Assembly: GCA_024704765.1 (NCBI GenBank) | Contig: JAKMXF010000111.1 | Location: 1,256,619 to 1,320,618, forward strand | DNA from: Oopsacas minuta | Taxonomy: Eukaryota; Animalia; Porifera | Direction of reading: 5' to 3' | Length of the DNA: 64,000 nucleotides | In this document: in pieces, positions 1 through 44,700 of the stretch | Position numbering within the stretch: the stretch's first letter is position 1 | Layout: each line of letters opens with the position of its first letter | Program-made: the position numbers and the translations under genes | The notes under the pieces: generated by a model | Told to the model about the DNA's origin: nothing | The model's database searches: none | What the model saw: only the letters and a program-made list of their open reading frames with translations

Positions 1-56
1 TTCAGAATCCGTTAATTCAGGTTGATATCGCTCAATTTGATAATCCATAGCATAAA

Positions 57-3353: not shown

Positions 3354-6300
3354 CTAAATACATAATACACAAGGTCATGTAAAGAATTACTTTCTCATAA
3401 TTACATATGTTCTAGGTAGTTTTGAACATTAGGAATAAATCGCTAATAACGATCTCCAACTTGACAATTGTAATGCTCACCATGTTCATACAATAATTTA
3501 TCTAAGCATAGAATGGATTAGTAGTTTCTTCCAGCTTCCATAAATCGCATGAACTAATAGTTAGTGAAATTAAGTTTAATTGAAATTCAAAAGAGCTACG
3601 AATTACACTGTTTTATACAACCATTATATAATTATTACAAAACAATACAACAATAAATCAATACTTCAATCCAACTTATTCTAACTAATAAAATTACAAA
3701 ACTTTCATAAATGAAGTCATTTCTTGTAGGAGAAATTCCTAATTAACTTCTTCAGTTGGACCTGCATCTAACAAAACGATTCGTCAGAGGTAGCTAACAT
3801 CGATGAGATTTCCTGGAAACTAGGTCTGATCTCTGCATTTATTTGCCAGCACTCTAGCATTACTGAGAATATTCCTTCCGGGCAACCAGTGGGTCGATCC
3901 ATAACATCTGAATTAGCATATGCCTGCAATACATCTTCGTTACTATACCCAGGCCACGGCTTCTCACCTAGAGACCAGATCTCATAAAGCGTCATCCCGA
4001 AAGACCAGACATCCGATTTCTCCGAGTAACGCTGGTAAAAGATAGCTTCAGGTGCTGTCCACTTGAGAGGGATCTTACCTCCCTTTGATGTGTAATAATC
4101 TCCTTCATCTCGGAGCTGTCGAGACAGGCCGAAGTCTGAAATCCGACAAGTGAGGTCTTTAGCTAACAACACATTGCGAGCAGCTAAATCTCGATGAATA
4201 AAGTTTTTGGAAGAGAGATAAGTCATGCCCGAAGCAATCTCTCTTGACAGCTTCAGGTAGAGAGAATACATCTGGGAACGTTGTAGAGTAGATTTGCGGA
4301 GTACCACTACGAATTTTAGAAGTTCTATATGCATTAGCTCAGTAACTATCATGAACGGTTCTGTAAGACTAACAATTCCGAGTAGACGGAGTACATTAGG
4401 GTGTGAGAATTGACCCATAATGGCTGCTTCCTGCAGGAAAGTAAGCTTCAATTCTATGGTGGATGAATCGTGGAGAGTCTTTATAGCCACAAGAAGAGGT
4501 TTGTTTGCCTTAAAGGGGTTGGATTCCATTCCTGATGTGTGCCAGAGACCCTTGTACACAGCCCCAAACTGACCTGATCCTATTTGTTCCTGTCGCTCAA
4601 TAGCACTCACAGCAATTTCGCGATATCTCATATCGGACATTTGATTGAATAGTAGACTCAGGTTCTTAGGAGGTTCCAAGTATATACTCCCCTGCTCGAA
4701 AAATGTATCGGATTTCTGTGATAATTGTCTTGAAGCTGATCCATCTGCACTTTCATACACACTTTCAGACCTCAATTCATATCTTGGCACAACCATTGAA
4801 CTTCCAATATAAGAGCATTGACTCGCTTCTTCATAAGTCTGATACAGGTCATTAACATCATCTGATATACCTAACTCTCCGTATATGTTCTCGTAGGATT
4901 CTGGAGCTGTCTTCATAGCAAATGGCGGTAGTATTTGACCCTGTTCATTAATACTGGAATAAGTAGGATTAGGAAAGTTGAGATTAAAGTCTGTGCTTTC
5001 TACGTGAGGATTTACTTCTGATTTCGGACTCCTATATACCACTTCATTCACGGAACATTCTGATGGAACTAATTGTATATCTTGTGGGTTGACCTCAGCA
5101 TATATTTCATCTTGGGCAGGTCTATTTCCTTTGGATTTATGAGTTCGAGTTAGGAGCAGAAAGAACAGGACAACTACCAGAATTACTATTACAATAATAA
5201 TCACAATCACGACAATAGGAACTGCGTATACTATTGGAAAGGTTATAGCTTCCACAACAGGCCCTGTAGAAACATCAGTAAGAATTGTTTTTGACGTTGA
5301 TTCTAATTGTATGTCCCGACAGGTATTTCCAATGGATCCAGATTTGCATTCACAAATACCATTATTACAAGATTGATTAGGTTTACATTTAGGTTCACAT
5401 TGAAGAAACTGACAATTCGGATAAAGAGGATCACATTCACAAACTCCTTCATTGCATATTTGTGTTTCTCTACATTTAGGAGAACAAGCTTTGGTCTCAC
5501 AACTATCACCGTAATACATGTGAGTGCATTCACAGGTACCATTTGAGAGACAATTACCATCATTCTGACAATCTGGTTGACAAGATAAATTCTGACAACT
5601 ATCACCATAATAAAGACCAGGGCATTCACAGGTACCATTTGATGTACAATTACCATCATTCTGACAATCTGGTTGACAAGATAAATTCTCACAACTATCG
5701 CCATAATAAAGACCAGTGCATTCACAGGTACCATTTGATGTACAATTACCATCATTCTGACAATCTGGTTGACAAGATAAATTCTGACAACTATCACCAT
5801 AATAAAGACCAGTGCATTCACAGGTACCATTTGATGTACAATTACCATCATTCTGACAATCTGGTTGACAAGATAAATTCTGACAACTATCACCATAATA
5901 AAGACCAGGGCATTCACAGGTACCATTTGATGTACAATTACCATCATTCTGACAATCTGGTTGACAAGATAAATTCTGACAACTATCACCATAATAAAGA
6001 CCAGGGCATTCACAGGTACCATTTGAGAGACAATTACCATCATTCTGACAATCTGGTTGACAAGATAAATTCTGACAACTATCACCATAATAAAGACCAG
6101 TGCATTCACAGGTACCATTTGATGTACAATTACCATCATTCTGACAATCTGGTTGACAAGATAAATTCTGACAACTATCACCATAATAAAGACCAGTGCA
6201 TTCACAGGTACCATTTGATGTACAATTACCATCATTCTGACAATCTGGGTGACAAGATAAATTCTCACAACTATCGCCATAATAAAGACCAGGGCATTCA

Positions 6301-9300
6301 CAGGTACCATTTGATGTACAATTACCATCATTCTGACAATCTGGTTGACAAGATAAATTCTGACAACTATCACCATAATAAAGACCAGGGCATTCACAGG
6401 TACCATTTGATGTACAATTACCATCATTCTGACAATCTGGGTGACAAGATAAATTCTCACAACTATCGCCATAATAAAGACCAGTGCATTCACAGGTACC
6501 ATTTGATGTACAATTACCATCATTCTGACAATCTGGTTGACAAGATAAATTCTGACAACTATCACCATAATAAAGACCAGTGCATTCACAGGTACCATTT
6601 GATGTACAATTACCATCATTCTGACAATCTGGTTGGCAAGATAAATTCTGACAACTATCACCATAATAAAGACCAGGGCACTCACAGGTACCATTTGAGA
6701 GACAATTACCACCGTTCTGACATCCTAATGGACATAATATATCTTCACAAGTATCTCCACTGTACCCACTAGGACAGTAACACATACCAGCGTGACAACT
6801 ACCGCCATTCTCACAATTATTAATACACTCACATTTTTTATTGTTGACACAGACGCCGGTAGCTGGACATGGGTTCTCATCATTACAATTTTGACATGTG
6901 ACTTTGAGCAATTCAAAGCAATCATCTACCACTGAAAACGTACATTCGGATAAATGTAATTCTGTCCCAATGCAATCAACCTTGACTCCACTTGTCGCTT
7001 CACCCTGTTCCCAACTTTCTTTAGCACTTGGTCTATCCCTACTTAGACAAAATACTGACGATTCATTCAAACTCCAACCCGAAAAACAAACGTCGGAATA
7101 TGTATCCCCATTCTCACAAATTTGTAGACGCTTGCCAGCTCTCTTGGTTTGTCCATAATTACATGAACTCGAAGTTTGCAATACGACAGTACCAGCAATT
7201 AACAGAAAAGCAAAAACTAACATATTAATATAATAGTATTTGTATATTCTATATGTATTTATATAAATTGGCCCTAGATAGTTGACTGTAATAGAATACT
7301 CTCTCTCATCCAATAATAGTGTTACTAAAAATAATTACTTTAATACTAGATTTGAGCATAATAAATGTCAAATATAATTATATATATATTAGCCTTCGGC
7401 TCGCAAACAAAAATTCACATACGTACATATGAGCAATTTGTGAAATTCAGATTCAGCATACTTGGTATATATATATATATATATATACCCTTGTGTAGTC
7501 ACTGACAGCAAGTTTCTATGTATAATTTAGATTTCGTTAGTTGTTTACATTCATAAAACAACAAATAAATATAATCATCTACAGTAGAACGCGGATAACT
7601 GGATAACTCTCAGTTTATACGTATAGTCGAGGAGAACATAGCCAAAATAATGCGTACTAATACGATTTTTGCTGAAAGTGATAAATAGGAGTATGTCAAT
7701 GCAGAATCCAGCGGGTGACACCTTGGAAGTCTCCTGATTCTGCACTTATACACTTTCAGCAAAAACTACTACTGTAATAATTCTTCTTCCAAACAAAATC
7801 TCAAATCACCGCCTGTGCCCACGTAATTTCCAGCATTTCAAGATTTTTATATTATTTGTTTACTTTATATTCATAAAATCAACAATAAATTTACATATGA
7901 GAAATTTAAGGATGCCAAATTCGGATTCAGCGTACTTAATTAGGGGCCGTTCAATGTTACGCAACTCAAAATTCTCTACATTCTGACCCCTTCCCCTCCC
8001 TATGTCATGCCTTTTGACAGTTTTTGTAATACAAAAAGAATGAGACTGTTACGCCTTGTATACCACCCCCTCTCCTTGGAGCGTTACGTAACGTTTGAAC
8101 GACACCTTACCCTTATACGTCTGTTGAGTCCGTGATAACATGTTGAAACCTAATCTCGAGCATGCTATTGAATTGTATATAGAAATGTATGAAAATATGA
8201 TTAACTACCTAAAAGGTGAAAACTATACACATTAGAATCTCTTCACATGTTAGGTACACATCTAGACGTCACAACGAGTATAAATGCCAAATTTGGTGTC
8301 TTAATCTCTAAAGGTGTGAACAGGAGAGTGAACACACATATACACACCAGTATATACATATATATATATATATGCCAAGTCAAACATTTTAGTACTGAGC
8401 CACTATGTGATATATTATATCTCAGAATTACGAAATTTTGACGAATTATATAACAGCATACTACACTTCCTTGACAACCGAGAAAGAGACAATAATTGAG
8501 ATTTAATGTAATATACGAACCCGGGGTATACAAGATTCATGAACGGACGCTGGTGGTGTTGATTTTAGACGATGAACGTGAATGAACTAAACGTGCGTCA
8601 ATTTGAGACGGATTGAATTGCATTAATTCAGTCTGTTCGTGAACCTTTCATTCCCTGAAAAGTACTAGATTCATAATCCGATATATTAAACTTTGCTAAT
8701 ACGCAAGCTTGATATTAGAGGAATTATTTCCAATACAAAATAGACTACAAAATAGAGTCTCTGAAAACTTGCTATTAGTCGAATATTGGTAATAGACGAA
8801 TTGCTAATAGGCGAACACCACTATTAATAATACATAATATAATATCTAAAACATTGGCTATTAATTCATTTAGAACTTCACCAAAATTGTACCTACTCTG
8901 CAAGTATTAGGCAAATTAGATATTCAATTAAGCATTATACTTGAGAGGGAACAGAATTTGTATTGATTTGTATATAATATTTTTTATATTTTCCAAGCTG
9001 ATCAGTGTAATTAGCGCTAGGTTAATTCCTCAATCTTTATGTTATCAAAGTATCTGACAGCATATGGAGTTATTGATGTAGGTTGGGTATTATGATCTTT
9101 GGTATCATGATGAAATCGTGAACGCATAAAATCCCATGGAATAGCATAAGAATAGACTATTGAGCGAGTTCTTTTTGGCGTTTTTGTTTCTACATCAGAT
9201 GACTCTTTGTTAGGAAAGTTTGAATTACTATATATTCTCTGTACTCTATGCGATTGGTTACACTTCACTTTCTTAATTGCTATACAGAATAAAGTACACA

Positions 9301-12300
9301 AACACACGCACAGTACGCCACAACCACAACCAACCATAAAAGTTGTAGATATTATCACACATAAGATTAACCAATTATCTGGTATTGATGTAATGGAATT
9401 AGGGATCAAACAATCTGAATTAAACAAATTATTACCAAAGCTATCATCAGAAGAATGATCAAAGCATACACAGGTACAATTTGTTAGACAACTACCATTG
9501 TTCTGACATTCTTTAAGACATAAGATTCTCTCACAACTATCACCATAATAAAGACCAGGGCATTCACAGGTACCATTTGAGAGACAATTACCATCATTCT
9601 GACAATCTGGTTGACAAGATAAATTCTGACAACTATCACCATAATAAAGACCAGTGCATTCACAGGTACCATTTGATGTACAATTACCATCATTCTGACA
9701 ATCTGGTTGACAAGATAAATTCTGACAACTATCACCATAATAAAGACCAGGGCACTCACAGGTACCATTTGAGAGACAATTACCACCGTTCTGACATCCT
9801 AATGGACATAATATATCTTCACAAGTATCTCCACTGTACCCACTAGGACAGTAACACATACCAGCGTGACAACTACCGCCATTCTCACAATTATTAATAC
9901 ACTCACATGTTGTATCGTCGACACAGACGCCGGTAGCTGGACATGGGTTCTCATCATCACACATTTGACATGTGACTCTGAGCAATTCGAAGCACTCATC
10001 TACCACTGAATACCTACATTCGGATAAATGTAATTCTGTCCCAATGCAATCAACCTTGACTCCACTTGTCCTTCCACCCTCTTCCCAACTTTCTTCAGCA
10101 CCTGGTCTATCACCACTTAGACAAAATACTGACGATTCATTCAAACTCCAACCCGAAAAACAAACGTCGGAATATGTATCCCCATTCTCACAAATTTGTA
10201 GACGCCCATACCTACTCTTGGTTTCTCCAAAATTACATGAACTCGAAGTTTGCAATACGACAGTACCAGCAATTAACAGAAGAGCAAAAACTAACATATT
10301 AATATAATATAGTTACAATAATTTTCCTTACTCCTTACTTATATATTTTCAGTATTATGATGTAATATTCTTTCAATTCATAGTTCCTAGGCCATACATG
10401 GATGCGTCCCAAAGCACATTTAACCGAGCACATATTAAATACAATATACAAGTAACTCATAATTTGAGAATAACATAAGTAAGCATATGTAAGACGAATT
10501 GAGAATAACATACGAAAACATCTTGTAAGCAAAATGTAATCCACTCTAATAATGCATCCAGTACAAATCTGCAACCAATATACATTTATGGCATAACTAC
10601 CGTGAGATTGCACGGGGAGACACATTTTAATTGTTCATCATTTTAAGGAGCGAATAGTCAGTGCCTACTACACACAGTCAACTCCCGTAATATAGAAACC
10701 CCAAGGGACCGTGATAATTACAGTCAGGGCCGCCTATTATCAACCCACAAGGGACCAAAAATCTTGTTCATAGAATTAATACATATAGAGACTTCATATT
10801 AAGGGAATTTAATTTAATACAAATCCTATGTGAATGATTTCTGGCTTGGTTCATAATAAGAGAATGTTCATAATGAGCACCTTTACTGTACTTCGATATA
10901 AATAGGATTCGATATAGCCGATGAAACTCTTAGGGATTATGTATATATGTATAATTTCTATATATCCGTGTTCGTTAATACGAAAGTTGACTGTGCTATC
11001 ATAAAAGTTAATTAGATACTTAAAGAATCCATAATAACGTAATTCACATAAATATCTTACTTATCAATAATCTTGATTTGTTTGCAAGCTCTTATATAGA
11101 TTAACACTTAGTCTAGGATCGTTCCCAATAATCAAGACAGGATCAGTTTGGGGTACAGGGGGCGGTAACTCTATTTCAATTAGCATACTCAATACTTTAG
11201 AAAAGGTTGGCCTTTCTGATTTTTCACTTCTCCATGTTTCTATCATTGTTTTGTATACATCTCGATTACAGCCTGTAGGTGGAGGTAACTTTGTCCCTAC
11301 TGATAGAGCCCTGACTATTTCCTCATTCGTAGAGTATGGCCATGGTCTCATTCCCAATGACCAGATCTCGTACATTGTCATGCCGAGTGACCACACATCA
11401 CTCTTTTCAGAATACTTTTGATAGAACACAGCTTCTGGAGCGCACCATCTGAACGGGATCTGTCCTCCCTTTGAAGTGTAGTCACCTTCCATACCGAACT
11501 GACGCGTCATTCCAAAGTCTGCAATACGACAAGTTAAGTTTTTAGATACCAAGACATTTCTTGCAGCAAGGTCGCGATGAATAAACTGCATTTCTGCTAG
11601 ATACTTCATACCAGCTGTGATATTGAGACAGAACTGTAGTAAGAGTGAAGGTAACAGCTGACATTTATCAAGTTGGGATTCTTTCAGCTTAAGCAAAAGT
11701 TCCCTCAGCTCAGATTTGAGTAGCTCTGTAATCATCATGTAAGGAGAACTACTAACTACACCAATTAACCTCAATACATTAGGATGTTTGAATTGGTTTA
11801 ATATCATTGCTTCCTTTATAAACGCATTTTCTGCTTCATTATTTGTATAATCTTTTAATTTCTTAACAGCTACGTCAATAGTACCATCAGGTGAACTATA
11901 TTGTGCACTGTAAACGATTCCAAACTGCCCTTGTGCTATTAACTGTCCAATTTTTAATTTGTCTTTATTTACTTCGATATTAGGATCATGACGTAGAGAT
12001 TTGATATACCGTGGAGGCTCAACGTATATCTTCCCAGAAGATGTGAGATGGTGATTCTTACTCACTCCTCGCTTAGAAATAGACGCATAATATTCTGTAT
12101 CAACATAACCGTCAAGGATGGAGGTATAAAAGTCTTCTTCCTTATGACAATCAAGTAGATTCGATTTACTTTTGGTAGTTGTAGGAGATTTTGGTTGGAT
12201 TGGTGATTCATATTTCCTTGAAGAATTTGCGTATGCTGTTAATGATGAATTAGAGGGTGGGACAGGAGGTATGGCCATCTGTGGTATAGGGTCAATAGAG

Positions 12301-15300
12301 TCAAAACTCCCACCAGCGGATTCAATTCTAGGTCTTCTCTCATAGCTTAGATTTTCGCTGGGATATGAATCGAAGCTGTCATCATCCATGAGCGGAAAAG
12401 TTCTATCCGTGTGGTCATTATTCGCTAAGGTGCCATAACGATTACTTGAATGAGAAACACTTCGAATATCACCATGATGTGTATTTTTAAATCTCATACA
12501 TTTGATTAAGACGAGTATTATACTGAATAGAGCGATCACGATAAGGATAACTGATAGGACAGATCCCACTACTATGCCTATTTCGTTATTATTCTGTTGA
12601 GATGTACCATCTACATCTAATTCACATTTAGGTTCTAGACTATTGTGGCATAAATGACAATAATCAGATTCATTAACGTAATTACATGTAGATGTGAAGT
12701 TGCAATATGAAATATATTTATTTCCATCACAATTCGTTAAAACCGGTTTCAGATTATTATTTGAGCTCTCATAACTCTCAACTGATCCAATATGAACCAT
12801 CCCTAGACAGAATTCATTGGTAGAGATATCGCCCAATCCTTCATCATTGAAACATAAAAACTTCCATTCGAGGGTCCTATTATTACTATTCAAACATATT
12901 TGAATAACATTAGATAAGTTTCCTATACTAGTTACTCTTTTGTCTCCGTCTCTACTACAACTTTGAGCGAATGTGTATGATAGATAAAACGTTAATACAG
13001 AAAGAGACAGCAAATAAACAAGTAAAATATTGGAATACATAAAAGCGAGAATCCAATTTCTTCCAGTACGATATTATTGATAAAGCAATATTATCCATGA
13101 TTATGAGAATATCTACCAGAAGAGTGATATATGATATGTACTTCTGAATAGATGTACCTATGACTATCAATTGATGCCTCCAAATGCAGTATAAATGAAA
13201 AAGAATACTTTGGGGCCTCTCTACGTGAGGCGTATTTCGATCATTTTTACTCAAAATATTTCAGTAATAACAAATTCCATAAGCTGGATCCTGACATTAA
13301 ATTGAATAATAAAATTGGACTCGTAACAGAGCAAAATGGATAAATAATAGATTAATAGAATAAAGAATAAATGTGAATCATTTTCAGATGCTGTGAATTT
13401 ATGTTCTATCAAAATTGATTGAGCATTTTATAAATTCAATATTCGGTATCAGGCTTATTCATTAGAAGATTAAAAAGTTAGTAATCAAGAATCCAAAGAA
13501 CACTTGGATATTTGCCTAAAAGTTGGTCTCATTTTTGGATCTTGCCTCCATGTCTCTAACATGATTTGGTACATTTTTTCTGGACAACGGACAGGTTGTG
13601 AGAGGGTGTCTCCGTTTGTAAGAGCTTGTATAACTTCCTCATTATTACAACCTTCCCATGGCTTATCTCCCAGTGACCAGATCTCGTACAGTGTCATACC
13701 AAATGACCACACATCAGATTTCTCAGAGAATTTATTGTAGAACAGAGCTTCTGGAGCTGTCCAACGGAGAGGTACCCTTCCACCACCTGAAGAGGTGTAG
13801 TAATCATTGTCACAATCTATTCCTCGTGACATACCGAAATCTGCCACACGTACACTCAAATCTTTCGCTACTAACACATTCCTAGCAGCTAAATCTCTAT
13901 GAATGAATTTCTTATCAGCTAGATGCTCCATTCCAGCTGCTATCTCCTGACTGAACTTCAGCAGTAGATTTTGAATATTTAGTTTGTCTGAAGAAGCAGT
14001 AGGTCTAATTTGGAGTAAGAGTTGTCTCAGTTCTGTCTTGAGGAGTTCTGTTACCATCATCCATGGTTCTTGAGTTGTCAGTATACCGATAAGTCTGAGT
14101 ACGTAGGGATGATGGAACTGAGTGAGAATAGCAGCCTCCCTCATGAAATCCATTTTGGTATCTTTGTTAGTACCCACAGTTTCCTTCAACGTTTTGATAG
14201 CTACAGGAATGTCTCCCTTCCCTGTACTGTATTTACCTCTGTACACAACACCGAACTGACCAGAAGCGAACTTTTCTCCTATCTCTATATCTTCTGCTCT
14301 AATCTCATGGATATATGCATCTACCATGTGTTTCAATTCAGGGAAGTTCTTAGGAGGCTCCAAATAAGGGCTATCAACTATAGTGCTCTTGTATAAAGAG
14401 TTAACTGATACACCAAAATGAATAGAGTCTATCAGCTGATTTGGATCAATCTTCTGACTTAGTAGGTTAGCATACATACTTGGTTCTATGACCTCCCCAC
14501 CCACTATACTCATATAGTGTTCTATGTTATTATATTCTAGCAGAAAATGAGTTGGATCTTGATATGGCGATGGATCTTGTGAAATGGTGTGATATATATT
14601 TGATGAGTTTCGAAGTGAATTGATAGGAGAATCACAATATATTTCAACCACTTCAGAATAAATTACTTCTTCTCCAGCAACATTGTCACAAGTTGTAACT
14701 GTAGGGTTATTGGTATTTAAATCTCTCCCTTCAAGATTATCAAGAATTAAAGTACGTGGCTCTTGCAAAAGCTTATCTGTGGATTTCTTCCTGCAAGTAA
14801 GACAAATAACTAATATGATGAGGACAGACAAAATAATGGATATACTGATAGCAATAACAAGACTGATGACCAAACCTATGATACTAATGTTATTATCGAC
14901 AGCTGACTCAGAGCAATTTCCTTGATTTAACCCAGATGAAGTACAGTCGATAGTTGGCAAAATAGTTTCTGTCGTAGACAAAATAGATTCTGTCGTAAGC
15001 ATAATAGTTTCTGTCGTAGGCATAGTAGTTTCTGTCGTAGACAAAATAGTTTTTGTCGTAGGCAAAATAGTTTCTATCGTAGGCATAGTGGTTTCTGTCG
15101 TAGGCATAGTGGTTTCTGTCGTAGGCATAGTAGTTTCTGTCGTAGGCATAGTAGTTTCTGTCGTAGGCATAGTAGTTTCTGTCGTAGACAAAATAGTTTC
15201 TGTCGTAGGCATAGTAGACTCAACATTAGTTTGGTTAGAAGTTGGTATTTGTGTAGATATGGTCGTACTAATTGTTGTTAATGGTTGAGTTAATTGTTGG

Positions 15301-33300: not shown

Positions 33301-36300
33301 TAGCCTTCCTAATGTTCTTTGTGTCTCAAATAAAACCGTCCTTGGGTAGGAAGAAAGTTGAGAATACTAAAATGACTGAAATGACTGTGCAAAACACTAA
33401 CAAACAATTTTCCAACAGAAAACCTCACGAGTATGAGCTAGAATTCGAAAATTCGCACGATTATTACTACATTAGAAATAGTCAAGTTGGACAGAATTCA
33501 TCTAATCCATTCTTGACGACCCAAGTAAGAGATGATAATTATGAGATAATAGAGTCAAGAAACATGTCTAATCAAGCTAAAAAACAAGAAGACCCGCCGC
33601 AGGATTTCTCAACTAATTCTACTTCAAACCTGGTGGATAAAGATCCGAAGTCAGATTATGTAATTGATGATATTAATGATTATTCTTAAGTTTCCTGATA
33701 TTTTTGAATAATATGACACTGAAATATAAATTTATAATTTAGTTCATTCGTGATTTAAAGGAGCACTATAATTAATTTACAGTAAGGGTCACAAATTATG
33801 AACATTCTTTTCTCTAATTATAAACCAAATCAGTGGCCCCAATAACTCATTCCCATAGGATTTGTATTAAAAGTAGTGGGCATCGCTTGCTTGCGCTACA
33901 CGAATCAGCTTTCTTATGTCCCCAATAGTGAACAAATATTCACAATATGTTGTTTACAATATTCATATTCGGAATCAGCATACTCGATTACCCCAGTATA
34001 ATGTTTATTTGTTGTTGTTGTTATGTTGTGTAATATTTGGTTCTGGACTTTATGAACTGAACCTATATAGTTCTATACGGGGGCGTGACAAACATACAGA
34101 CACACACAAAATACTGTTCAATTAATCACAATGTAAGATTCGAGAATTTACGGATACCCTCAAGGGCGGGCCTGGAGTACGACCTTCTCTCCCTCTCATT
34201 TATGAAATTAATTTGACCAGGATAATGAAACTTATAACTTTCAAGAATATCTGAAACTATGGATATGTAAACATTCTAACAAATATATCGTATTAATTAT
34301 CGTTCATATTATCGATTACATAAAATGACCTCTGGACTACATCTGAGGTAGAATTAGTTGGGAAATCAGGTAACAGGTCATCTTTAGCTCTATCTGATTC
34401 ATTAAACGTGTTTCTTGGCTGTATTGACTTAGAATTGCCATTATAAACTGGAATAGTTACTAATGGATTCGATGAGTTCTGTTCAACTAGTGTATCTTGA
34501 ATGCAGCAATAATTATGAGAAATATCGAATTCAAGCTCATACTGTGGAGAGTTTATATAAGAAGATTTCTCAGAGCTGTGCTCTGTTATTACAGTCATTT
34601 TAGCATTTTCATCAACTGTTTTCCGACCGAATTTAGGTTTCATTAGACACACCATAATTGCTAAGCAAGCTAATATTCCGAAGCAGATTATTATCAAGGT
34701 ACAGCTCAATATTAGCGATGGGACAGCTGCAGCAATGATTATCAAGGTTAGACTAGAATCAGTAGGTACTACTTCAGGGAAGAAACTAGTATTAGTCGAA
34801 GGGAATTTTACTGTTGTATTATTAAATTCACATCTTTCACCTGAATAAGATGGCATACACTGACACGTCCCGTTAGCAGTACACACACCTTCATTCTCAC
34901 ATTGAGGGTCGCATCCACTACATGTAGGACCACCAAACCCATCTGAACATAAACACTTCCCCAGAAAGCAGTACCCTCCGTTTTCACAGTCATTGAGACA
35001 TACACATTTCCCATTCATTGAACACTGTCCTCCTAGACACATAGAATTATTCGTACAACTGATACATGATAGTACTGTTACAGAACATGTCAATAATTCA
35101 GAATAAGAACATTGATTCAAAGTAGTTTCATCTCCCATACAGACTAGGTTGTCTATAGCTAGAGCTGTAACGGTCATAGAGGTGGGCGTGGCGGAATCTT
35201 GCATTGGAAAGCCAAGTACCTTGCAAAATACCTTGGCCTCCTTCTTACCGAAATCACCGCAAAAAGAATTCCATATTTGGGTTCCACTTGCATTACTACA
35301 GAGTTGAGGATACATGTCATTGTATAATCTCACTGAACCTAGTGATTGGCATATTTGTGGAGCAGTTTGAGCTTCTATTTGATACCATAATGTAGACAAC
35401 AGCAGATAGAGAATTAATCTCATTTCTACGCTGATAATATTGCGTATTTATTATTTTCTTTAGTTATCTACCAATTAGATATTAACTCCTTCAGAGTTTT
35501 CTTACTTTAAAGAATTATAAGAAATGAATAGTACCTACTTTGTAAATACTGCAATAAATGATATCTCAACTGGTAAAACTACTAGTGTATCATCTTACTA
35601 CCTAGATAAACCTTACCTGAGCATGGTATTCGCAATGGTTTAAGAATTGGGGCCACCACGAGTCCAGGGGTTATTTACAGACCTTAAACTCAAACCCATT
35701 TAGGAAAAATCAATTCTTTGGATTGGCCTTTACAAAAAATGTCCAGCCGACAGACTGTAGTGCAGCTCAGGGTTATGTATTTTGTTCTTTTCAGGGGCAC
35801 GTCTCCCCTGACCCCCCACGTGTGTGTGTATGCGTGTAGATGTTGCAATGCACCAGACCCCGACTGATTTTGGGCTCCTGGATCTAATAAATAGTTCAGG
35901 AGATTCAATATTATTAGTCCCCAACTGTACTTCATGTTCTATTCTCAAATCCTATGGATAAAATTCTAAATAAAAATCCTGCAATTGTACCCTGTCTAAC
36001 TTTTGGAACAAAATCTCTAGCATCAATTTGAAATATGTGCGAAAAAGTGTGAAAATATGATAAATCATGTAGATATCTAGCTTGCTTTTGTATTTGACAC
36101 ATAGAAAGGTGTTTTCACATATGATTAATATCACCAAAAAAGGTGTGAAATATTCACTTTAGAAAAATTCATACCCAAGTTGCAAATCTCCGACCAAAAA
36201 TGTACATGCGTACCAATTTTCATGTGAATCGGACTGCTATCGTAAGGCAGATTTCGAACGGCAGAAATTTCACAAATTGTTCCTCAAATAATGGATTAAT

Positions 36301-39300
36301 TATAGCATAAATGAAGGGAGGGGGTTTATTGAAACCCTAAAATATTATAACAATCAACAACTAGTGCAATTTTAATACGATAGAAAACTATAAATGTATA
36401 ATCGTACACAGTTGGTGATGGATTCCAGTAGAAATATTACTACAAATAATATCATTCATCAACACTTAAGACTCATCATATTCAACCACGGATTGGTTTT
36501 CGTAAGCATTCTCCTTCCAATCACTGTCCTGTTTTTTAAGTAACAAATTAGGAGATGAAGCTTCCATTAAAATAGGAAGATTTCGTATAGCAGGTTCTTC
36601 ATGATTTGATGCATTGACGATTTGATTTTCATAATTAGTTGTGGAGTCAAATCCTTCCCGATTTAAACTTGTTTTGGCTTCAAGCACAGAGTCTTCAACC
36701 TCATAATGAGAAGTCTTCTTTTCTGAGGGTTCATCTATGCTATTACTGTTTGGCATAGGTGGCCTGCTATCCATTTCTACATAAAAGGATTCATCCCGTG
36801 CAGGAGGTAGGGCAGGTGGCATCCCATGATCCATCATACGCCTTTCGTCAACGACTGTATAAATAGTTGATGTTCTTTCTAAGAAGTCCGGCATCTGTAA
36901 ATCAAGTTTTTCCGGTTTGACATTTTTATGCCACTTATTTTTCATCATAAAACATACCATAATACACAGGCACAAGCATAAAAACGATACCAATAATATG
37001 AAACCAAACAACACGCCAAATACGACAATGCCTAACAAGATAGGATCCGAGAAAATAGATGAAGTTCCAGTAACAGGAGATTCTGTTGTATTATTGATAA
37101 ACGTTGTAGTAGGAATGCAAATATTGTCTACTATTTGCCCAGCACAACAGGAAAATACGCCATCATTCAAATTAACAAGGCATCGACTGCTAGATGGACA
37201 AGGTGGAGAACATGTCATAAGAATTTCACAATATTCACCAGTGTAAGGAAACTGACATTCACAAATACCATTGTCTTGACAATTACCAGAGTTTTGGCAA
37301 GGTGAAGAACATGTCATAAGAGTTTCGCAATATTCACCAGTGTAAGGAAACTGACATTCACAAATGCCATTGTCTTGACAATTACCAGAGTTTTGGCAAG
37401 GAGGAGAGCATATCCTATCCTCACAGTCATCTCCTGCATACCCATGAAAGCAGACACACCCTCCTACGTAACACACCCCATTCTCACACTGTTTGCAGCT
37501 ACAAGTACCGTCAACATTACATATAGAGTCATCGTCACCTAAACAATCTGTATATGAAGTGCATGATTCACAAGTTAGTCCACTAACGTAATGACATAAA
37601 CCAGTCATTACATAACCGCCACACTCGGAAATGTTTGTAGGACTTGGATTTCCCAAACAAGCAAAGTTTGTATATTTAGGGGTTCCAATATCGCCTACGT
37701 ATACAGGCATTATCATTGCGTCATCATTGATGTAGCCACTTAAATAACAGAAATTCTCGCTGTTACCACCAGATGGTGCCCAGTTCCCGTTATAACACAT
37801 GGACATGAAATAGAGGCCAGCGTCAAAAAAACTAATCGAAATATTAGAGGCGTTGAAGTAAGCACATATTTGAGGGAATGATCTGTTAGAATCGTCGAAA
37901 TATATTCTAGTGTCACCTGAAATCTGACAAGGTTCTACGGGAGGACCTTCGATTCCATCCACAGGACAAAAGACCGCACAAAACAGGATTATAGAGGAAT
38001 AAATGAAAATTCTCATTTTGGATAAATTATTGTTCTTGGAGGTTTAGTAAATGTATATACTGAGGAGTTAAAGGCATATTGCTACCTGATGACCAATACT
38101 ATCCCAGCAACTTACTAGGTTACATGTTGCAAAGTACAAATTAATGCAAAAGTATGTCAAATCATTATTGTAACTCGAATAAAGTACTCCTATAATGTTT
38201 GTAATGTAAAGTGCTATTATTAGATGCAACATAGGGTGTAATAGGCGTGACGAGAGGTTAGAGAAGGACATTAATAAAGATATCTTCTACCTAGCAAAAT
38301 CAGAGATGAAAGAAAAACGATACTACAATAATTACATACTCGGATATTAATAATCATTTGTATTATACATATCTTAATGCAAGAATTCCATCTACACTCT
38401 GCTCCATTAAGATCAAACCAAATCATTTCTTAGGTAATCATCAAGTATTATTTATTAATTTTCTGTGTAAAGAGTGTACCCTTTAAAAAGTGAAATAACA
38501 CAATTGGATATGAGATGGAGAATATTTAACTGTGTATCAACAATAAATACACACTCTGGCTCTGGTCAAACATCAGGGCCGGTGCCACCGTGGGTGTCCT
38601 GGGTGTCCAGACACCTACTGCCACGAAAGACCTTTGCATTATCCTCTATGGTAGATGCTGTTTAGACACCCAAAAGCTTCAATAGGCGGCGCCGGCCCTA
38701 AATATCATAAATCTCCCGAAAAATACTAGCACATAGTAGTGAATCGGTCTGAAGATCCGAAGATGAGATATTCGTGAAAATGTCCCGATAATACTCGTAT
38801 ACTCTAACCAGAGTAGACTGAATTATATAATTACACAATTAAAATAGATAATCTTAACCATAAGCTGCCATAACTAATGTATAACTACGAGTAATATTAT
38901 GCTGCAAATGTCTACACACTACCATTATTCGAATTAACTAAATAGAAAAGGAAATTTATTTTTGAATAATTGTATATGATAGATATCATCACATAATATT
39001 CAGAGTAATATTAAGAAGAAAATTACAAATGAGATAAAAATAAAATTATCTCCAACTACCCACAAGGAAATATCCTAAAGTTATTGAACTTTGTGGGTTA
39101 ATATGGCTCGTACCACTCACAGTTTGTTATAGCGATTATAAAAGTGTGAAATCGAGTAGAATAATAAACAAACTGTACTAATGAATATATTATTCTATTA
39201 TCTGGTGATCTTATTATTAACTTATAACATACATGTTATAGTAGAGACGCGTAGTCTAACGGGAAACTACACTAGAGAACGATTAGTAACAGATGAAACA

Positions 39301-41158
39301 GGCTCGCGTTGTGTGAATGAATATCGCTACGAAAGTGATAATAATGTATCTTGGTTGAGGATATGTGCAGATGAAATGAGTGAGCATACTGTAAGCCTTT
39401 TGTGTAGAAATCTTCTGGATCTTAGTACAAACTCAATAGAGATAAATGATTCTGAATCTCCAAAGAATCGAAATGAAAAAGTGCGCATAGATTGTGATGG
39501 AGATGAAACCAGATTAGAAGAGTGTAATGTTGAAATAGTCAATTCCTGTAAAACAATCCTGCATGACAAAGTATGTGTTAACTGTAGCCAAAACTCCCAG
39601 TGTAATGGATCAGCTGTGTGTGGAAGCGGTGGAGTGTGTGTTTGTGAATTTCCTAATTTCGGTGCAGATTGTGAGTTGAGGAACTGCTCCCCTCCCTGTA
39701 ATATTAACCAGACTTGTAATAATCAAACTGGAATATGTCAGTGTAAAGTTCCATTCTATGGAAATAACTGCGAATTGAGAGGATCAGTTTGTCCAGCTCA
39801 ATGCTTGAATGGAGGTTCATGTAACTTTGCTGATGGTACTTGTCTATGTGCTAATAGTTACCATGGAGATGTATGTGAGTTACGAGTATGTATTCCAGCC
39901 TGTAAGAATGGAGGTGTGTGCATATCCCCTAATCACTGTAAATGTGTTAACGGTACGTATGGAGTGTTATGTGAAGAGGTGGACTCAGATATATTTCGTC
40001 ATGGATTAACGGTTGGTGTCTCACTTGCTGTTATAGTTTTTTTCATTTTAGTTATCATATGCATGATAATTTTGCTATGTATACAACTCAAAAAGCTAAT
40101 GAAGTATAAATTGGATGGAATCTCTATTCGCAAGAAGAAAATACAAAAAGAATTGAAAAGAGAAGTTCAAATGGAAGATTACGTAAATATTCCCAAAGAA
40201 ATACATAGGCAACAAGCACATCTTACACAAATACAAGCTGTCATACCGAATCTGAACCGAAACAGATTATCAGAAGTATACTACGCTATTCCGCAACAGC
40301 TAAGAAATACGGAATACAGAGAAGAGGGTTACTCTACTATGCGGTTACACTACGATAACGTAATCGCTGCAGAATCATGCCAGGATATAGAAAGCGGACA
40401 GCAAGAGCAGAGAACAGAAACTCCAGAATATATTGAGCTGCAATAGATATTCTGTCACATAGAGTGAGTAGATTAGTTTAGTTTAAGAAAGTTTAGGTTG
40501 ATACAAGATTTTCTATGTTCTAATTAAAATATTAATACAGTCTACATCTGGTAACTAGAATGCCCGTTAACTCGAACGAATATTCAGTTCACTTCGTTGT
40601 ACTTTTAGTACTTATCGCATCCGTTAACTCGAACATTCGATTTTTCCAACAGATTTTCAGGAATCGAATTACTGAATGTGAACTATATAGTATATTAATT
40701 AAATCTCCATTTGTGTCTGTGTGTCTGTGTGTCTGTCACGCTCCCATATAGAGAACATATAGGTTCAGTTCATAAAATCCAGAACTAAATACTACACAAC
40801 ATAACAACAACAAAACAACATTGTACTGGGGTAATCGAGTATACTGATTCCGAATATAATATCGTAAACAACATTTCCTAAATATTAGTTCACTTTTGGA
40901 GACATAAAGAAAGCAGATTTAAAGTTTATGGCAGTATCATGTTTGCTACGGTTAAGATGAGACCAGGGGGGGGGTCGACAAAGTGCGGCCCCTCATAGCA
41001 AGTTTGGGCAGCGCGGGCAAGCTTCAGATACTCACATAAACTAGCTATCTTCGCTGTAATAACTAATTCCATAACCTTATTTGCCACCCGAATCTTCTTG
41101 TTTAAGTACTTTTGTATATTTAACATAGCCTTATTTAAAATTTCAATTATTTCTTTAC

Positions 41159-41216
<58 letters not shown>

Positions 41217-41658
41217 GTAGTAGACAACAAATCTTTACGATTCAAGAACCTTTCTACGAAACTATTAGTCAACCACCTAACGAAGAACCCGATGATACTC
41301 CAGATGTCACAATCAATACCACAATTACAACAGATTTAGAATATACTAGTTCAGAAAATTCAAATGATCATCTCTAAACCAAACATGATTACATAGCCTG
41401 TCAGCAATCAACACTTTCAGAAACCACCATTGCTCAAATCCACTTTATATAGTAACTCCCATAAATAATATTAGTAAGCTCATATACGCTTTATCATCTT
41501 TCGTTACTCAGAAATCTAGAATGTTCCTTCAAACCTTAGAATAGCAGCAATCAGTTATATTTAGTACTATAGTTGTGTTTGTACTGATGAGCTGGATAAA
41601 TAGCCAGCGAAACAAATTATGTTATTGTCTACTACTATTAAATCTACATATACTCTTT

Positions 41659-41706
<48 letters not shown>

Positions 41707-44700
41707 TAATAATAACAATAATAATAACAACAATAAATGTATATATGAGAACCTTGAAATTCGGATTCAAGTCATTCAACCCAGTATAAATGTTGAGAGC
41801 AAATCTCTTCCAATATTTTCAGATTAGTAAATTTGTTTAATTGGATTCAGCATATTATATTTTGAATTTAATACTGCTTACTAAGGACAGGCTACATTTT
41901 GAAATTTTTCGGCCACTGAAAGTCTTAAAATGGTGAATGCGGCCCACTTTGCAGACCCCTGAAGTAGACTATGAACACCACACAGCTACACACACATAGG
42001 GTATACAATGTCACATCACTTTACAATCGTTTTATTAAGATTCGTATGACTCCATTTAAGAATATAAAAGGATTTTCAATAAATAAGTATCCAGTACATC
42101 AACCTGTTATATTGTTACTCGTTATTCTGTGAGTTCAGTATATTAGAAAATACGTCAATCGCATAACAATCAGTTAGATTAGTGGAATATATGGCGAAGT
42201 GGTTAATTACGTTAATTATTAAGTCAGAAATACTGAAAATTCTCCAAATAAGTTATGCAGAACAAAGTGCAGCTAATAAGGCGGTAAGTGTATGTGGGTT
42301 TCGAGAGATTACATTCAATCATTTTCCTAGTAGAACAGCCCTGAAGATATTTACGGGATTCATTAACAAAGAATTTTTGAGATTCGTACAATGTTTGCAT
42401 AAATCAATAGATTGTTGTAAGACAGTGATGTTGCTATCTATCTCATTCAGCAGGGATTCTCAAGTGGAATCAGACAGCACTTCTTCTCAATATCATATAA
42501 AAGAAACGTTCTCACTGATTTTGAGTTAAATTTACTCATGAATTATATATATTTACAATTTCTACTGCTGATCCTAGTTATAGCATACACAAACAGTGAG
42601 TCATGTGATGTGTATGGAGAGTTAAGAGAAGTGAAGGAGGGAAGGAAGAATTCCCCACAGGTATGTGATTACGATAATTCAGGTTCATTAAACTGGTACC
42701 AGATATGCGATAATGGATGGGATATAGATGATGCAGATGTATGGTGCAAACAGCTGGGTTATATTGAAGCAGAAAATAAAGGTAAATCAGTCAAGAAACC
42801 AGGTAATAATCGGAATACAGTAAAGATGAATAATTTCAACTGTAATCCTGATACAGACAAGAAGCTGGTGGACTGTTCTAATGTGAAACAAACCAATAAA
42901 TGTGATTATGTAACAGATATAAAGTGTAAGAGATGTGATAGTGATATACAATGTATTGGAGTAGGCTCTTGTAATATAGGTAGTGGTATCTGTAAGTGTT
43001 CAAACAACAGTACTTGTGGAGTTGGAATGATGTGCAAGGAAGAAAGATGCGAGTGTATACGCTCATCTTGTCAAACTTGTCAACAAGAATGTCAAAATGA
43101 TGGAATATGTCAGAATGATGGAACATGTGAGTGTGTTGGATTATATTACGGAGATAGTTGTCAGGATAAATTGTGTACCAATGAATGTCCTGATAATAGC
43201 TTTTGCGTTACAGTTGGAGAATGTGTAGTAACCGTCATACCAACCACAGAACCTAAAACTACACTTGTTGAAATTCCTATAACTACAACAAAACAATCCA
43301 TAGCTACAATAACTACAGAACGACCTACAACCATGCTATCTACTAAAGCACATATAACTACACTTCCTATTGTACTACCTACTGTAACCACAAAACTTTT
43401 AGAAGTAACTAATTCAGATCATTCAACAACAAAGCCTGAAAAAGAAGTACCAAACACTCCAGAACAAGATTCCAGGCCTGGTTTAACATTAATGGAAAAG
43501 CTAATACTGAGTATAAGTATCTCAGCAGGACTAGCTTGTATCATTATAACCTGTATTGCAGTCCTGTCAATTTGCTTTATAAGTAACATTAGAAAGAAAA
43601 GGAAGAGAGTACTCATGAAGGAGAATGAATACGAAGAGATGGCAGCTCTACCCAGCTGTAGTTTCCATGAGTCTGCTAACTGTTCTGATAATATTTCTAT
43701 CAGCTCTCCTATTGAATATGATTCGGTTGTAGAAGAGGTTATGTCTTATTCTACGATAGACAGTGTATCTGAATTTGTTAATGCAACAAACCAAGCTCCA
43801 TATTACTCTACAGTAAGAGAAAGCATCCCCGTTGATGAGGTAGCTGTAGAGGAACTGCCATACTACTCTACTGTAGGAGAAATAATACCAGCTATTAGCA
43901 TAGAAGAACCAGCTCCGTACTACTCTACAGTAGGAGAGAATAACCTAGATAGTGAGGCAGTTAATACGGAGGTACAAGCTCCATACTATTCTACAGCGGG
44001 GGATATATCAACAGGGAATGAGCCAGGTATATATGAGAGTATAGAGTTTGGGTATAGAGACTATGAGAATGTCAACGAGAACAATCCAATAGAGCCTTAT
44101 CTGATCACTTAGCGATATTTTTAATATGGACAGTTGGATACATATACTAATTTATTAAATCATTGTAAATGGCACGCAGTAATCTATAATGATACAATTG
44201 TAAGGATTGGTCTGAATTGAAATAAGATAATATGAAATATATTTTATCAATAAAACTCGATGTGTATAGGTGCAGAATTAATGGAGGAAATGGTAAATAC
44301 AAACTTGAAATAAAACAGATGTATGGAATGAAATGTTACAAATGTTTAACCCATCAGACTTGATATAATACAAATGCATGATGATACAAGTTACATGATG
44401 ATCAGTTGCAATCCTATCTGAGCCTATAGATGTTGGCTAGTACAAATTACAACATATATTAGTAAGTAAGTTTATTCGATTTTCACCAATTTGATTAGTA
44501 GTTAAAGGTCAAAAGCAGCTGAATTTTGTATGTACTGTACCAAATATCATACTAAGTGCTCTGCTGATATGATATACTACGTATGCAGTAACTTCAGAAA
44601 AAATGCAATCATTAAACACAATAAGTATCATGTCATGTATTATGCAACAATATATACCAAAATGTTGAAGTAATTTATTATTCATAAAAATACATACTTG

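What the first reader, a model, noticed from the sequence alone, without database searches (positions are those of the whole stretch)
3768..44112. Modular mix-and-match receptor system: candidate immune or allorecognition locus
Seen: 14 single-exon type-I receptors assembled from a small parts list (variant SRCR tip, EGF or mucin stalk, TM, then kinase or tyrosine-motif tail). Six have intact kinases, one is a pseudokinase and seven are kinase-less. Kinase genes occupy 3.7-29.9 kb and kinase-less genes 30.2-44.1 kb (R2 excepted). Modules are shared between different partners (R1/R2, R4/R5, R7/R13). Established: SRCR proteins are expanded pattern-recognition receptors in sponges and sea urchins; paired signalling, inhibitory and decoy receptors with tyrosine motifs typify KIR/LILR/Siglec clusters and Hydractinia Alr genes. 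Inference: this is a receptor repertoire diversified by intragenic cassette exchange rather than exon shuffling, with kinase-less members acting as substrates, co-receptors or decoys for the kinases.
Basis: partly seen in the sequence, partly recalled or inferred. Interest (0 to 1): 0.9.

Follow-up and report, generated by a model that had tools for sequence, protein, structure and literature searches.

The report
Glass-sponge receptor kinase gene array
This is an old, conserved row of 14 intron-free cell-surface receptor genes in the glass sponge Oopsacas minuta, half with a tyrosine kinase and half with tyrosine-motif tails, whose neighbours keep copying whole domains into one another; nothing tested here marks it as an immune or self-recognition locus.

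Summary
Window 3768-44112 carries 14 uninterrupted ORFs for type-I membrane proteins. Six have intact tyrosine kinases, one (R8) is a conserved pseudokinase, and seven have no kinase. An SRCR tip is shown for 10 of the 14, not all.

The shared modules are real:
- R1/R2: 92.8% identical over 857 nt.
- R4/R5: 684 nt identical.
- R7/R13: 382 nt identical, and raw-read unitigs support two copies.

The contig is JAKMXF010000111.1 of Oopsacas minuta.

The array keeps its gene order, orientation and near one-to-one orthologues in four related assemblies, although synonymous sites are saturated. There are no pseudogenes. Whole-gene dN/dS is 0.08-0.43. Tip and kinase trees agree except at a few chimeras.

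Module sharing comes from recurrent, domain-limited gene conversion. Modules are 94-100% identical within a species but only 64-82% identical between species. R2 gained its R1-type ectodomain in this lineage only.

Tail tyrosines are preferentially conserved (p about 1e-6), which fits phosphotyrosine docking. An immune or allorecognition role is untested and, on present evidence, disfavoured.

First readers of this scan flagged similar loci elsewhere in this genome (for example s1-257327); I did not check them.

The parts
3768..7223 (-). R1: SP-SRCR-about 17 EGF (12.8 x 96-bp tandem array at 5495-6722)-TM-tyrosine kinase, 1151 aa from the ATG
   Evidence: orthologue B1409 (50% aa)
9017..10297 (-). 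R2: SP-SRCR-EGF-TM-85 aa tail, no kinase. A chimera: the ectodomain is R1-derived, while TM and tail are orthologous to small genes B173/C144 of relatives
11064..13040 (-). R3: SP-SRCR-short stalk-TM-tyrosine kinase
   Evidence: orthologues B624 and C631
13485..15884 (-). R4: SP-SRCR-EGF-mucin (12.5 x 21 bp)-TM-tyrosine kinase
   Evidence: orthologues B712 and C704
16990..18966 (+). R5: SP-non-SRCR Cys-rich tip-S/T/P stalk-TM-tyrosine kinase
   Evidence: orthologues B698 and C691
13589..14272 (-). R4 copy of the 684-nt identical kinase core (wider tract 13539-14360)
   Evidence: the same segment is 82% nt identical to orthologue B712
18176..18859 (+). R5 copy of the 684-nt identical kinase core (wider tract 18088-18909), inverted relative to R4
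   Evidence: B and C show the same homogenisation among three kinases
21206..23752 (+). R6: SP-SRCR-6 EGF-TM-tyrosine kinase; the closest solved kinase is Eph
   Evidence: orthologues B821, C838p and D869p
25187..27493 (+). R7: SP-4 EGF-TM-tyrosine kinase
   Evidence: orthologue B764 (74% aa); D orthologue continuous with its ectodomain
25279..25660 (+). R7 copy of the 382-nt four-EGF cassette
   Evidence: separate unitig at about 2x depth in three runs
39597..39978 (+). R13 copy of the identical 382-nt four-EGF cassette
   Evidence: B764/B381 are 99.3% identical over 290 nt
27990..29891 (-). R8: SP-about 45 aa stub-TM-pseudokinase (Gly loop lost, VAIK Lys->Arg)
   Evidence: the Gly loop is also degenerate in orthologues B639 and D634
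30220..31212 (-). R9: SP-Cys-rich/EGF-stalk-TM-185 aa tail with conserved YxxM motifs and RPLPPxP
32553..33689 (+). R10: SP-SRCR-EGF-TM-tyrosine-motif tail
34293..35423 (-). R11: paralogue of R10 (72% nt), same architecture
36466..38016 (-). R12: SP-SRCR (with insert)-EGF-TM-tail with conserved TxYxxV/I, YVEM and YEN
39181..40446 (+). R13: SP-SRCR-R7-type EGF cassette-TM-tyrosine-motif tail
42538..44112 (+). R14: SP-SRCR-Cys-rich-mucin-TM-tail with 4 x PYYSTxG and a conserved C-terminus
6367..7223 (-). R1 side of the R1/R2 shared ectodomain tract (R2 side is 9441-10297)

Best explanation
The locus is an ancient tandem array, conserved in its lineage, in the glass sponge Oopsacas minuta. It holds 14 intron-free genes for single-pass receptors. 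Each is built from an SRCR tip and/or teneurin-type EGF repeats and/or a mucin stalk, then a TM segment, then either an Eph-like tyrosine kinase (six active, one conserved pseudokinase) or a kinase-less tail rich in conserved tyrosine docking motifs.

Shown:
- The array arose by old tandem duplication and is kept under purifying selection.
- Recurrent gene conversion acts on top of this, limited to blocks of paralogous sequence. It keeps particular modules of neighbouring genes nearly identical within each species: the R4/R5 kinase, the R7/R13 EGF cassette and the R1/R2 ectodomain.
- Now and then it creates a chimera. R2 is a small TM adaptor that acquired R1's ectodomain.

Inferred:
- The set works as a phosphotyrosine signalling ensemble at the cell surface.
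- Kinase-less members that share an ectodomain module with a kinase member bind the same partner and serve as co-receptors or substrates presenting SH2/SH3 docking sites.
- R8 acts as a non-catalytic scaffold.
For: Organism: JAKMXF010000111.1 belongs to the Oopsacas WGS project.

Architecture.

Synteny and orthology in assemblies B, C, D and E.

Orthogroups in the kinase and tip trees.

Concerted evolution:
- Within-species module identity is 94-100%; between species it is 64-82%.
- A 2x-depth 382-bp unitig is seen in the assembly's own reads. A double-depth unitig followed by a fork is seen in a 2-6% diverged lineage.

R2 chimera.

Purifying selection: whole-gene dN/dS 0.08-0.43 against 0.12-0.15 for PARG and PA-RING; no relics.

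Tails: tyrosines are conserved at 27/47 positions against 191/831 for other residues, Fisher p=9e-7. YxxM, YxN, [IV]xYDSV and TxYxxV/I motifs are conserved across species.

Pseudokinase: its features are conserved in three species.
Against: - No expression data: no RNA run was found. Transcription, single-exon structure and co-expression are therefore unproven.
- No biochemical evidence that the kinases phosphorylate the kinase-less tails.
- Short tyrosine motifs arise easily by chance, although their conservation argues otherwise.
- Conversion could be a neutral by-product of proximity and homology rather than selected.
- Ectodomain tips of young paralogue pairs have dN/dS about 1-1.9. Kinase-less genes have roughly twice the dN of neighbouring housekeeping genes. 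Both leave room for ligand-driven diversification.
- The relatives are unnamed ENA assemblies, so the depth of the clade is inferred only from sequence divergence.
Confidence: 0.65

Rival explanations
1. Immune or allorecognition repertoire. The genes are fast-diversifying recognition receptors. Cassette exchange generates variety, and the kinase-less members act as inhibitory or decoy partners, as in KIR/LILR/Siglec or Hydractinia Alr.
For: - SRCR domains are common in invertebrate pattern-recognition families (PMC8242945).
- Tips of recent paralogue pairs have dN/dS 0.7-1.9 against 0.25-0.8 for kinase tracts.
- Ectodomain tips are only 30-64% identical to orthologues, against 76-85% for kinases.
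- Motifs fitting ITIM and ITSM consensus are conserved in R14 and R12.
- TRAF-like genes lie nearby.
Against: - Gene order, orientation and near 1:1 orthology are kept in four other assemblies despite saturated dS.
- No pseudogenes.
- Whole-gene dN/dS is below 0.45.
- R7 against a 2-6% diverged lineage shows 18 silent and 14 replacement codon changes.
- An 8.3-kb variant-free unitig covers R7-R8 in the sequenced individual (weak evidence, because contigs drop rare variants).
- No canonical ITAM and no charged TM residue.
- The R1/R2 tip excess of replacements (22.8 against 3.2) rests on few sites and was not tested for significance.
Confidence: 0.15
2. Contact-dependent developmental or adhesion signalling, in the manner of Eph/ephrin-B. 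Kinase-bearing and kinase-less members interact in trans through SRCR-EGF ectodomains and signal in both directions in the syncytial tissue.
For: - The kinase domain is closest to Eph kinases among solved structures (EphA2, E 1e-65).
- A conserved Y-x-E-P-P juxtamembrane motif recalls, from memory, the Eph juxtamembrane tyrosines.
- The kinase-less partners have conserved cytoplasmic tyrosines, as ephrin-B does.
- Conserved orthology fits a housekeeping developmental role.
Against: No Eph ligand-binding domain, fn3 or SAM domain. There is no evidence of trans interaction. The resemblance to ephrin-B is only an analogy.
Confidence: 0.15
3. The identical modules are assembly artefacts, that is, collapsed or mis-joined repeats.
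For: Perfect identity over 382 and 684 nt is unusual for paralogues whose flanks are below 50% identical.
Against: - Three runs give a discrete 382-bp unitig at about twice the flanking depth, with forks at both ends.
- Separate assemblies of relatives show the same modules homogenised: B at 97-99%, C at 94-98%.
- Identity decays in a graded way at the tract edges.
Confidence: 0.03

Closest known systems
Lineage-specific receptor tyrosine kinase radiations of sponges and unicellular holozoans (Amphimedon kinome, choanoflagellate RTKs)
   Same: Many RTKs with non-canonical ectodomain combinations, often in tandem, and with no orthologues in bilaterians. This rests on my own knowledge of Srivastava et al. 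2010 and Suga et al. 2012, and on PMC8662651, which mentions organism-specific TK families.
   Different: Here kinase and kinase-less members sit in one conserved array. Specific modules undergo concerted evolution in several species. The SRCR-EGF-TM-Eph-like-TK architecture was not described in any paper I could search.
Eph receptors
   Same: Closest solved kinase domains; activation-loop tyrosines; a tyrosine-containing juxtamembrane motif.
   Different: No Eph ligand-binding domain, fn3 repeats or SAM domain. Bona fide Eph receptors exist separately in sponges (PMC6485061).
Paired receptor clusters (KIR, LILR, Siglec, SIRP) with gene conversion between members
   Same: Clustered genes share near-identical ectodomain modules but have different cytoplasmic outputs. 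Gene conversion keeps the ectodomains alike. Tails carry tyrosine motifs.
   Different: The ectodomains are not Ig. The activating arm is an intrinsic kinase rather than an ITAM adaptor. The TM has no charged residue. Orthology is stable rather than birth-and-death, and there are no pseudogenes.
SRCR-superfamily receptors (CD163, CD6, DMBT1, MARCO; sponge and sea-urchin SRCR expansions)
   Same: The tip domain has the SRCR fold.
   Different: There is a single short SRCR of 93-124 aa at the tip, followed by EGF or mucin and an intracellular kinase or docking tail.
Receptor pseudokinases (for example HER3, and the ROR/RYK/PTK7 class)
   Same: R8 keeps the fold, HRDL and DFG but lacks the glycine loop and, in two of three species, the VAIK lysine. 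It is conserved under purifying selection.
   Different: It has almost no ectodomain, and it is unrelated by descent.

Membership tests
Receptor tyrosine kinase (general) | Signal peptide, ectodomain, one TM segment and a cytoplasmic tyrosine-kinase domain with HRDLAARN, DFG and P-x-x-W-x-APE | tested here: met
   R1 and R3-R7. R8 has the fold but has lost its ATP-site residues.
Eph receptor family | N-terminal ephrin-binding domain (PF01404), Cys-rich region, two fn3 repeats, SAM domain | tested here: not met
   Pfam finds none of these in any of the 14. Only the kinase domain is Eph-like.
SRCR superfamily | SRCR fold of about 100 aa with conserved cysteines | tested here: met
   20 of 30 isolated tips hit PF00530. 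The R1 tip model has pLDDT 89.5, and the 50 matches listed are all SRCR. Not met for R5. Absent in R7-R9.
Paired immune receptors (KIR/LILR/Siglec type) | Ig-superfamily ectodomains | tested here: not met
   No Ig domain by Pfam.
Paired immune receptors (KIR/LILR/Siglec type) | Activating members with a charged TM residue pairing with ITAM adaptors; inhibitory members with ITIM | tested here: inconclusive
   No charged TM residue and no canonical ITAM in the window's proteins. One ITIM-consensus motif (R14) and one ITSM-consensus motif (R12) are conserved.
Paired immune receptors / allorecognition loci (including Hydractinia Alr) | High allelic polymorphism, copy-number variation, birth-and-death turnover | tested here: inconclusive
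   Turnover is low: 1:1 orthologues in four assemblies and no pseudogenes. Polymorphism could not be tested properly, because only one 6-kb stretch was laid and only as contigs.
Sponge aggregation-factor allorecognition genes | Calx-beta and Wreath domains | tested here: not met
   No Calx-beta match in the Pfam scans. The Wreath domain was not searched for specifically.
Multigene family under concerted evolution by gene conversion | Paralogous segments more alike within a species than orthologous segments between species, with orthologous flanks | tested here: met
   - R4/R5 97.9% against 82% to the orthologue.
- R7/R13 100% against 75% and 64%.
- The same pattern holds in B and C.
- Flanks are orthologous by position and by tree.

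The most novel reading that the evidence does not exclude
The kinase/kinase-less pairs that share an ectodomain module (R7/R13, R1/R2, and B821/B737 in a relative) are obligate co-receptor pairs. Selection, acting through recurrent gene conversion, keeps their ligand-binding module identical. This would be a non-Ig counterpart of paired receptors, based on an intrinsic kinase, in one of the earliest-branching animal lineages, which lacks much of the usual developmental signalling toolkit.
Probability: 0.2. Interest if true: 0.75.

Novelty: new variant of a known kind. Interest (0 to 1): 0.55.

Why it matters
Glass sponges are syncytial, early-branching animals. The Oopsacas genome paper stresses missing core signalling genes and does not mention tyrosine kinases or SRCR receptors. 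This locus shows that the lineage maintains a conserved, compact set of unusual receptor kinases together with kinase-less partners.

It also gives a clean natural example of domain-scale gene conversion. In some places conversion homogenises modules; in others it creates new receptor architectures without exon shuffling, because the genes have no introns. The example is replicated across several species.

The locus offers testable receptor/substrate pairs for studying how phosphotyrosine signalling was wired early in animal evolution. It does not, on present evidence, offer a candidate for the long-sought sponge self-recognition locus.

Tried and rejected
- RNA evidence: the search for RNA runs returned only DNA-like runs from the assembly's own sample, plus one diverged lineage. 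Expression is therefore untested.
- Atlas searches with PARG, R6 and R14 gave only generic PARG, TK and SRCR neighbours.
- The R5 tip as a degenerate SRCR: rejected by hhalign.
- Pseudogene relics of the extra B737-type gene, or of other receptors, in the window's intergenic DNA: none by tblastn at E<1e-4.
- The D536 gene call looked like an R7 orthologue without an ectodomain. The ORF in fact continues upstream through three EGFs, so this is a gene-call artefact.
- The long ORFs at 5303-6712 and 5543-6772 are alternative-frame artefacts of the 96-bp repeat.
- An 'invertible switch' between the inverted R4/R5 kinase repeats: an inversion would only swap the last residues of two otherwise identical kinase ends, so I do not favour it (reasoning).
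- Literature: no description of this family in the Oopsacas or Aphrocallistes genome papers, or in full-text searches. Srivastava et al. 2010 is not held.
- P0177, an R6-like RTK that shares a contig with the PARG relative P0039, lies in an unrelated neighbourhood. It is a dispersed paralogue, not part of the array.
Full report
**What is there.** The window is AT-rich (about 35% GC). Between 3768 and 44112 it carries 14 long uninterrupted ORFs on both strands. Each begins with a hydrophobic leader and has one strong transmembrane segment.

Pfam finds a tyrosine-kinase domain in R1 and R3-R8, and teneurin-type EGF repeats in R1, R2, R6, R7 and R9-R13. Tandem Repeats Finder confirms four coding repeats:
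- a 12.8 x 96-bp EGF array in R1;
- 3.5 copies of the same unit in R2;
- a 12.5 x 21-bp mucin repeat in R4;
- a 2.1 x 99-bp EGF duplication in R12.

The two other long ORFs at 5303-6772 are off-frame readings of the R1 repeat.

The cluster ends at R1 on the left, with nothing coding in 1-3767. On the right it ends at R14. Then follow a Sen15-like ORF (named from its syntenic counterpart in relatives), an unassigned 218-aa membrane ORF, MRG exons (also named from synteny), a PA-RING ligase, PARG, LTA4H fragments and a TRAF-like gene.

**The tip domain.** In whole-protein scans only R4, R10 and R14 pass the SRCR threshold. I cut out the N-terminal Cys-rich tips of the window's genes and of their relatives (30 sequences, alignment A1). 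Three results show an SRCR fold:
- Scanned alone, 20 of the 30 hit PF00530. This includes the R1 tip at 26.4 bits, above the cutoff of 26.1.
- An AlphaFold2 model of the 93-aa R1 tip, built on A1, has mean pLDDT 89.5.
- The 50 PDB matches listed by Foldseek are all SRCR domains, such as CD163, CD6, complement factor I, M2BP, SCARA1, MARCO and DMBT1, with TM-scores of 0.48-0.72.

So R1-R4, R6 and R10-R14 have a short SRCR tip. The R5 tip and its two orthologues do not match the SRCR profile (hhalign probability 0.13). R7 and R9 have EGF only, and R8 has a stub of about 45 aa.

**Kinases.** In an alignment of 23 kinase domains, R1 and R3-R7 keep the VAxK lysine, the alpha-C glutamate, HRDLAARN, DFG, at least one activation-loop tyrosine and the P-x-x-W-x-APE motif. 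R1, R6 and R7 keep a full G-x-G-x-F-G loop. In R3, R4 and R5 its first glycine is alanine.

R8 has no glycine loop and has Lys->Arg in VAIK. Its orthologues B639 and D634 also have a degenerate loop, although D634 keeps the lysine. This is therefore a conserved pseudokinase, not a decaying gene. Its whole-gene dN/dS against B639 is 0.08.

Among solved structures the R6 kinase is closest to Eph kinases (EphA2, E 1e-65, 225 bits). Abl and Src score about 188-203 bits. None of the Eph-defining ectodomain or SAM domains is present.

**Organism.** R6 is encoded on NCBI GCA_024704765.1, contig JAKMXF010000111.1, 1,926,057 bp. JAKMXF000000000 is the Oopsacas minuta whole-genome project (PMC10280926). 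This confirms the earlier scan note s1-290525. That genome paper does not mention tyrosine kinases, RTKs or SRCR. Nor does the Aphrocallistes genome paper.

**Relatives and synteny.** The PARG next to the array has unnamed relatives at 67-82% identity on large ENA contigs. The nearest named animals are below 51%. I walked four of those contigs. Each carries the same array.

- Assembly B (ERZ25069837) has, in the same order and orientation, counterparts of R1 and R3-R14. It has a short gene (B173) at R2's place and one extra gene (B737). The array is followed by Sen15, MRG, PA-RING, PARG, LTA4H and TRAF.
- Assembly C (ERZ25071281) shows the R1-R6 part.
- Assembly D (ERZ25072730) shows the R6-R14 part next to the same flanking genes.
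- Assembly E (ERZ20067936, PARG 67%) shows the R5/R6-R12 part about 25 kb from PARG, with an actin gene inserted.

Best-hit relations between the window's proteins and those of B, C and D, searched in one direction each, are one-to-one, at 38-74% amino-acid identity. Synonymous sites between the window and B are saturated (dS about 0.8-3.3). dN is 0.16-0.52 for the receptors, against 0.19-0.20 for PARG and PA-RING. Whole-gene dN/dS is 0.08-0.43. By domain, tips are 30-64% identical and kinases 76-85%. tblastn finds no receptor relics in the window's intergenic DNA.

The array is therefore old, stable and under purifying selection. Its ectodomains and tails evolve about twice as fast as neighbouring housekeeping genes.

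**Module sharing is concerted evolution.**

Within the window:
- R1/R2 are 92.8% identical over nt 1-857.
- R4/R5 are 97.9% identical over 822 nt, with a perfectly identical 684-nt core.
- R7/R13 are identical over 382 nt.
- Outside these tracts identity drops to 35-55%.

Between species the same segments are much less alike. R4-B712 and R5-B698 kinase tracts are 82% and 81% identical. The R7-B764 cassette is 75% identical, and R13-B381 is 64%.

Other assemblies show the same modules homogenised:
- B712/B698/B737 kinases are 97-98% identical.
- C704/C691/C728 kinases are 94-98% identical.
- B764/B381 EGF regions are 99.3% identical over 290 nt.
- B737/B821 and C728/C838 ectodomains are about 95% identical.
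- In D, by contrast, the R7 and R13 orthologues share only 58% amino-acid identity in this region.

The maximum-likelihood kinase tree has six orthogroups with species-tree-like content. The exception is the R4/R5 group, where R4 and R5 are sisters (support 99/95). The SRCR-tip tree recovers the same orthogroups and also pairs R3 with R4. Incongruence is thus confined to R2, R5, R13 and B737/C728.

**Read evidence.** Contigs from three runs of the assembly's own sample give a discrete unitig covering exactly 25279-25660, at about twice the flanking depth. This is what two exact copies would produce.

A run labelled as another organism carries this region at 2-6% divergence. It too has a double-depth unitig inside the cassette, followed by a fork into two continuations, although it differs from the window at 5 of 219 positions. 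This points to continuing conversion in separate lineages.

The cassette edges coincide with the limits of paralogy: the four EGFs in R7/R13, and the kinase domain in R4/R5. Homology-dependent conversion would give this result without any special mechanism.

**A documented chimera.** R2's TM segment and tail are orthologous to small genes at the same position in B and C (B173 and C144, 43-49% identity). Those genes have only a short ectodomain. R2's SRCR-EGF ectodomain is R1-derived. So in the Oopsacas lineage a small membrane adaptor gained a neighbour's ectodomain.

In the same way, B737 and C728 combine an R6-type ectodomain with an R4/5-type kinase. This gene is absent from the window.

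**Selection on young copies.** Nei-Gojobori counts for recent paralogue pairs:
- R1/R2 tip: dN/dS 1.9 (22.8 replacement and 3.2 silent differences).
- Tips of B737/B821, C728/C838 and C710/C997: dN/dS 0.7-1.1.
- Kinase tracts: dN/dS 0.25-0.8.

This is consistent with relaxed or mildly positive selection on tips. The counts are small, and I did not test them for significance.

For R7 against the diverged lineage, the listed differences are 18 silent and 14 replacement codons. That indicates purifying selection. This list is only part of the differences.

**Tails.** Across orthologue alignments of six kinase-less genes, 27 of 47 tail tyrosines are invariant, against 191 of 831 other residues (Fisher p=9e-7).

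Conserved motifs:
- YxxM in R9, R12, R13 and R14;
- YxN in R12, R13 and R14;
- [IV]xYDSV in R14;
- TxYxx[VI] in R12;
- an RPLPPxP proline motif in R9;
- PYYSTxG repeats in R14, with four copies here, more in B and one in D.

No TM segment has a charged residue. Several are Cys-rich. These features fit phosphotyrosine docking sites. That the neighbouring kinases are the writers is inference.

**Wider family.** An exhaustive HMMER search with R6 finds 4,833 proteins at E<=1e-30, mostly through the kinase domain. Among the best hits are unnamed proteins with SRCR+TK or EGF+TK, and a named Oopsacas RTK paralogue on another contig. First-reader notes of this scan list further SRCR-RTK and adaptor loci elsewhere in this genome; I did not check them.

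**Verdict.** The mix-and-match signal is genuine. It is best explained by recurrent, homology-bounded gene conversion with occasional chimera formation inside an ancient, conserved receptor array.

The immune or allorecognition reading is not supported by what could be tested: stable orthology, no pseudogenes, purifying selection, and no sign of heterozygosity in the one stretch examined. The last point is weak because contigs hide rare variants. Population and expression data are still needed to rule that reading out.

Noticed in passing
window:24200-24650: The intergenic stretch upstream of R7 has read depth up to about 50 times single-copy, with many forks and loose ends in all runs. It is probably a high-copy dispersed repeat or small transposable element.
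   Followed up: no
window:46525-60239: The flanking block Sen15, MRG, PA-RING, PARG, LTA4H and TRAF-like is syntenic with the receptor array in assemblies B and D. In assembly E, ABC-transporter genes follow PARG within the 10 kb examined, and the receptor array lies about 25 kb from PARG.
   Followed up: partly
window:47074-47730: A 218-aa ORF with several hydrophobic segments and no Pfam match, between the Sen15-like ORF and the MRG exons.
   Followed up: no
C-termini of R3, R6, R7 and R8 (for example window:23660-23752, 27374-27493): A conserved motif follows the kinase domain: G-N-[DE]-P-x-L, and in R3, R7 and R8 a further L-Y-x-x-L-Q. It is present in all orthologues of these four groups and absent from the R1 and R4/R5 groups. 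It may be a docking or regulatory tail.
   Followed up: partly
TM and juxtamembrane of R2, R8 and R9 (for example window:29600-29690): Runs of cysteines in and just after the TM segment. They are candidate palmitoylation sites and are conserved in B173, C144 and B639.
   Followed up: no
window:24000-29950 in run X5: A 2024 run labelled as a different organism holds this locus at 2-6% nucleotide divergence. It could be a sister species or a distinct population, and would be useful for dN/dS if fully laid.
   Followed up: partly
L010:13187-14317: An actin gene sits inside the receptor array of assembly E, between the R7 and R8 orthologues.
   Followed up: no
L008:11816-15297: Assembly D has a recent whole-gene duplication of the R12 orthologue (D529/D487, 90% nt identity), and no R11-type gene in the stretch seen.
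   Followed up: partly
window:41160-41736: Two AT-rich trinucleotide microsatellites, (ATA)19 and (TAA)25, lie in the R13-R14 intergenic region.
   Followed up: no
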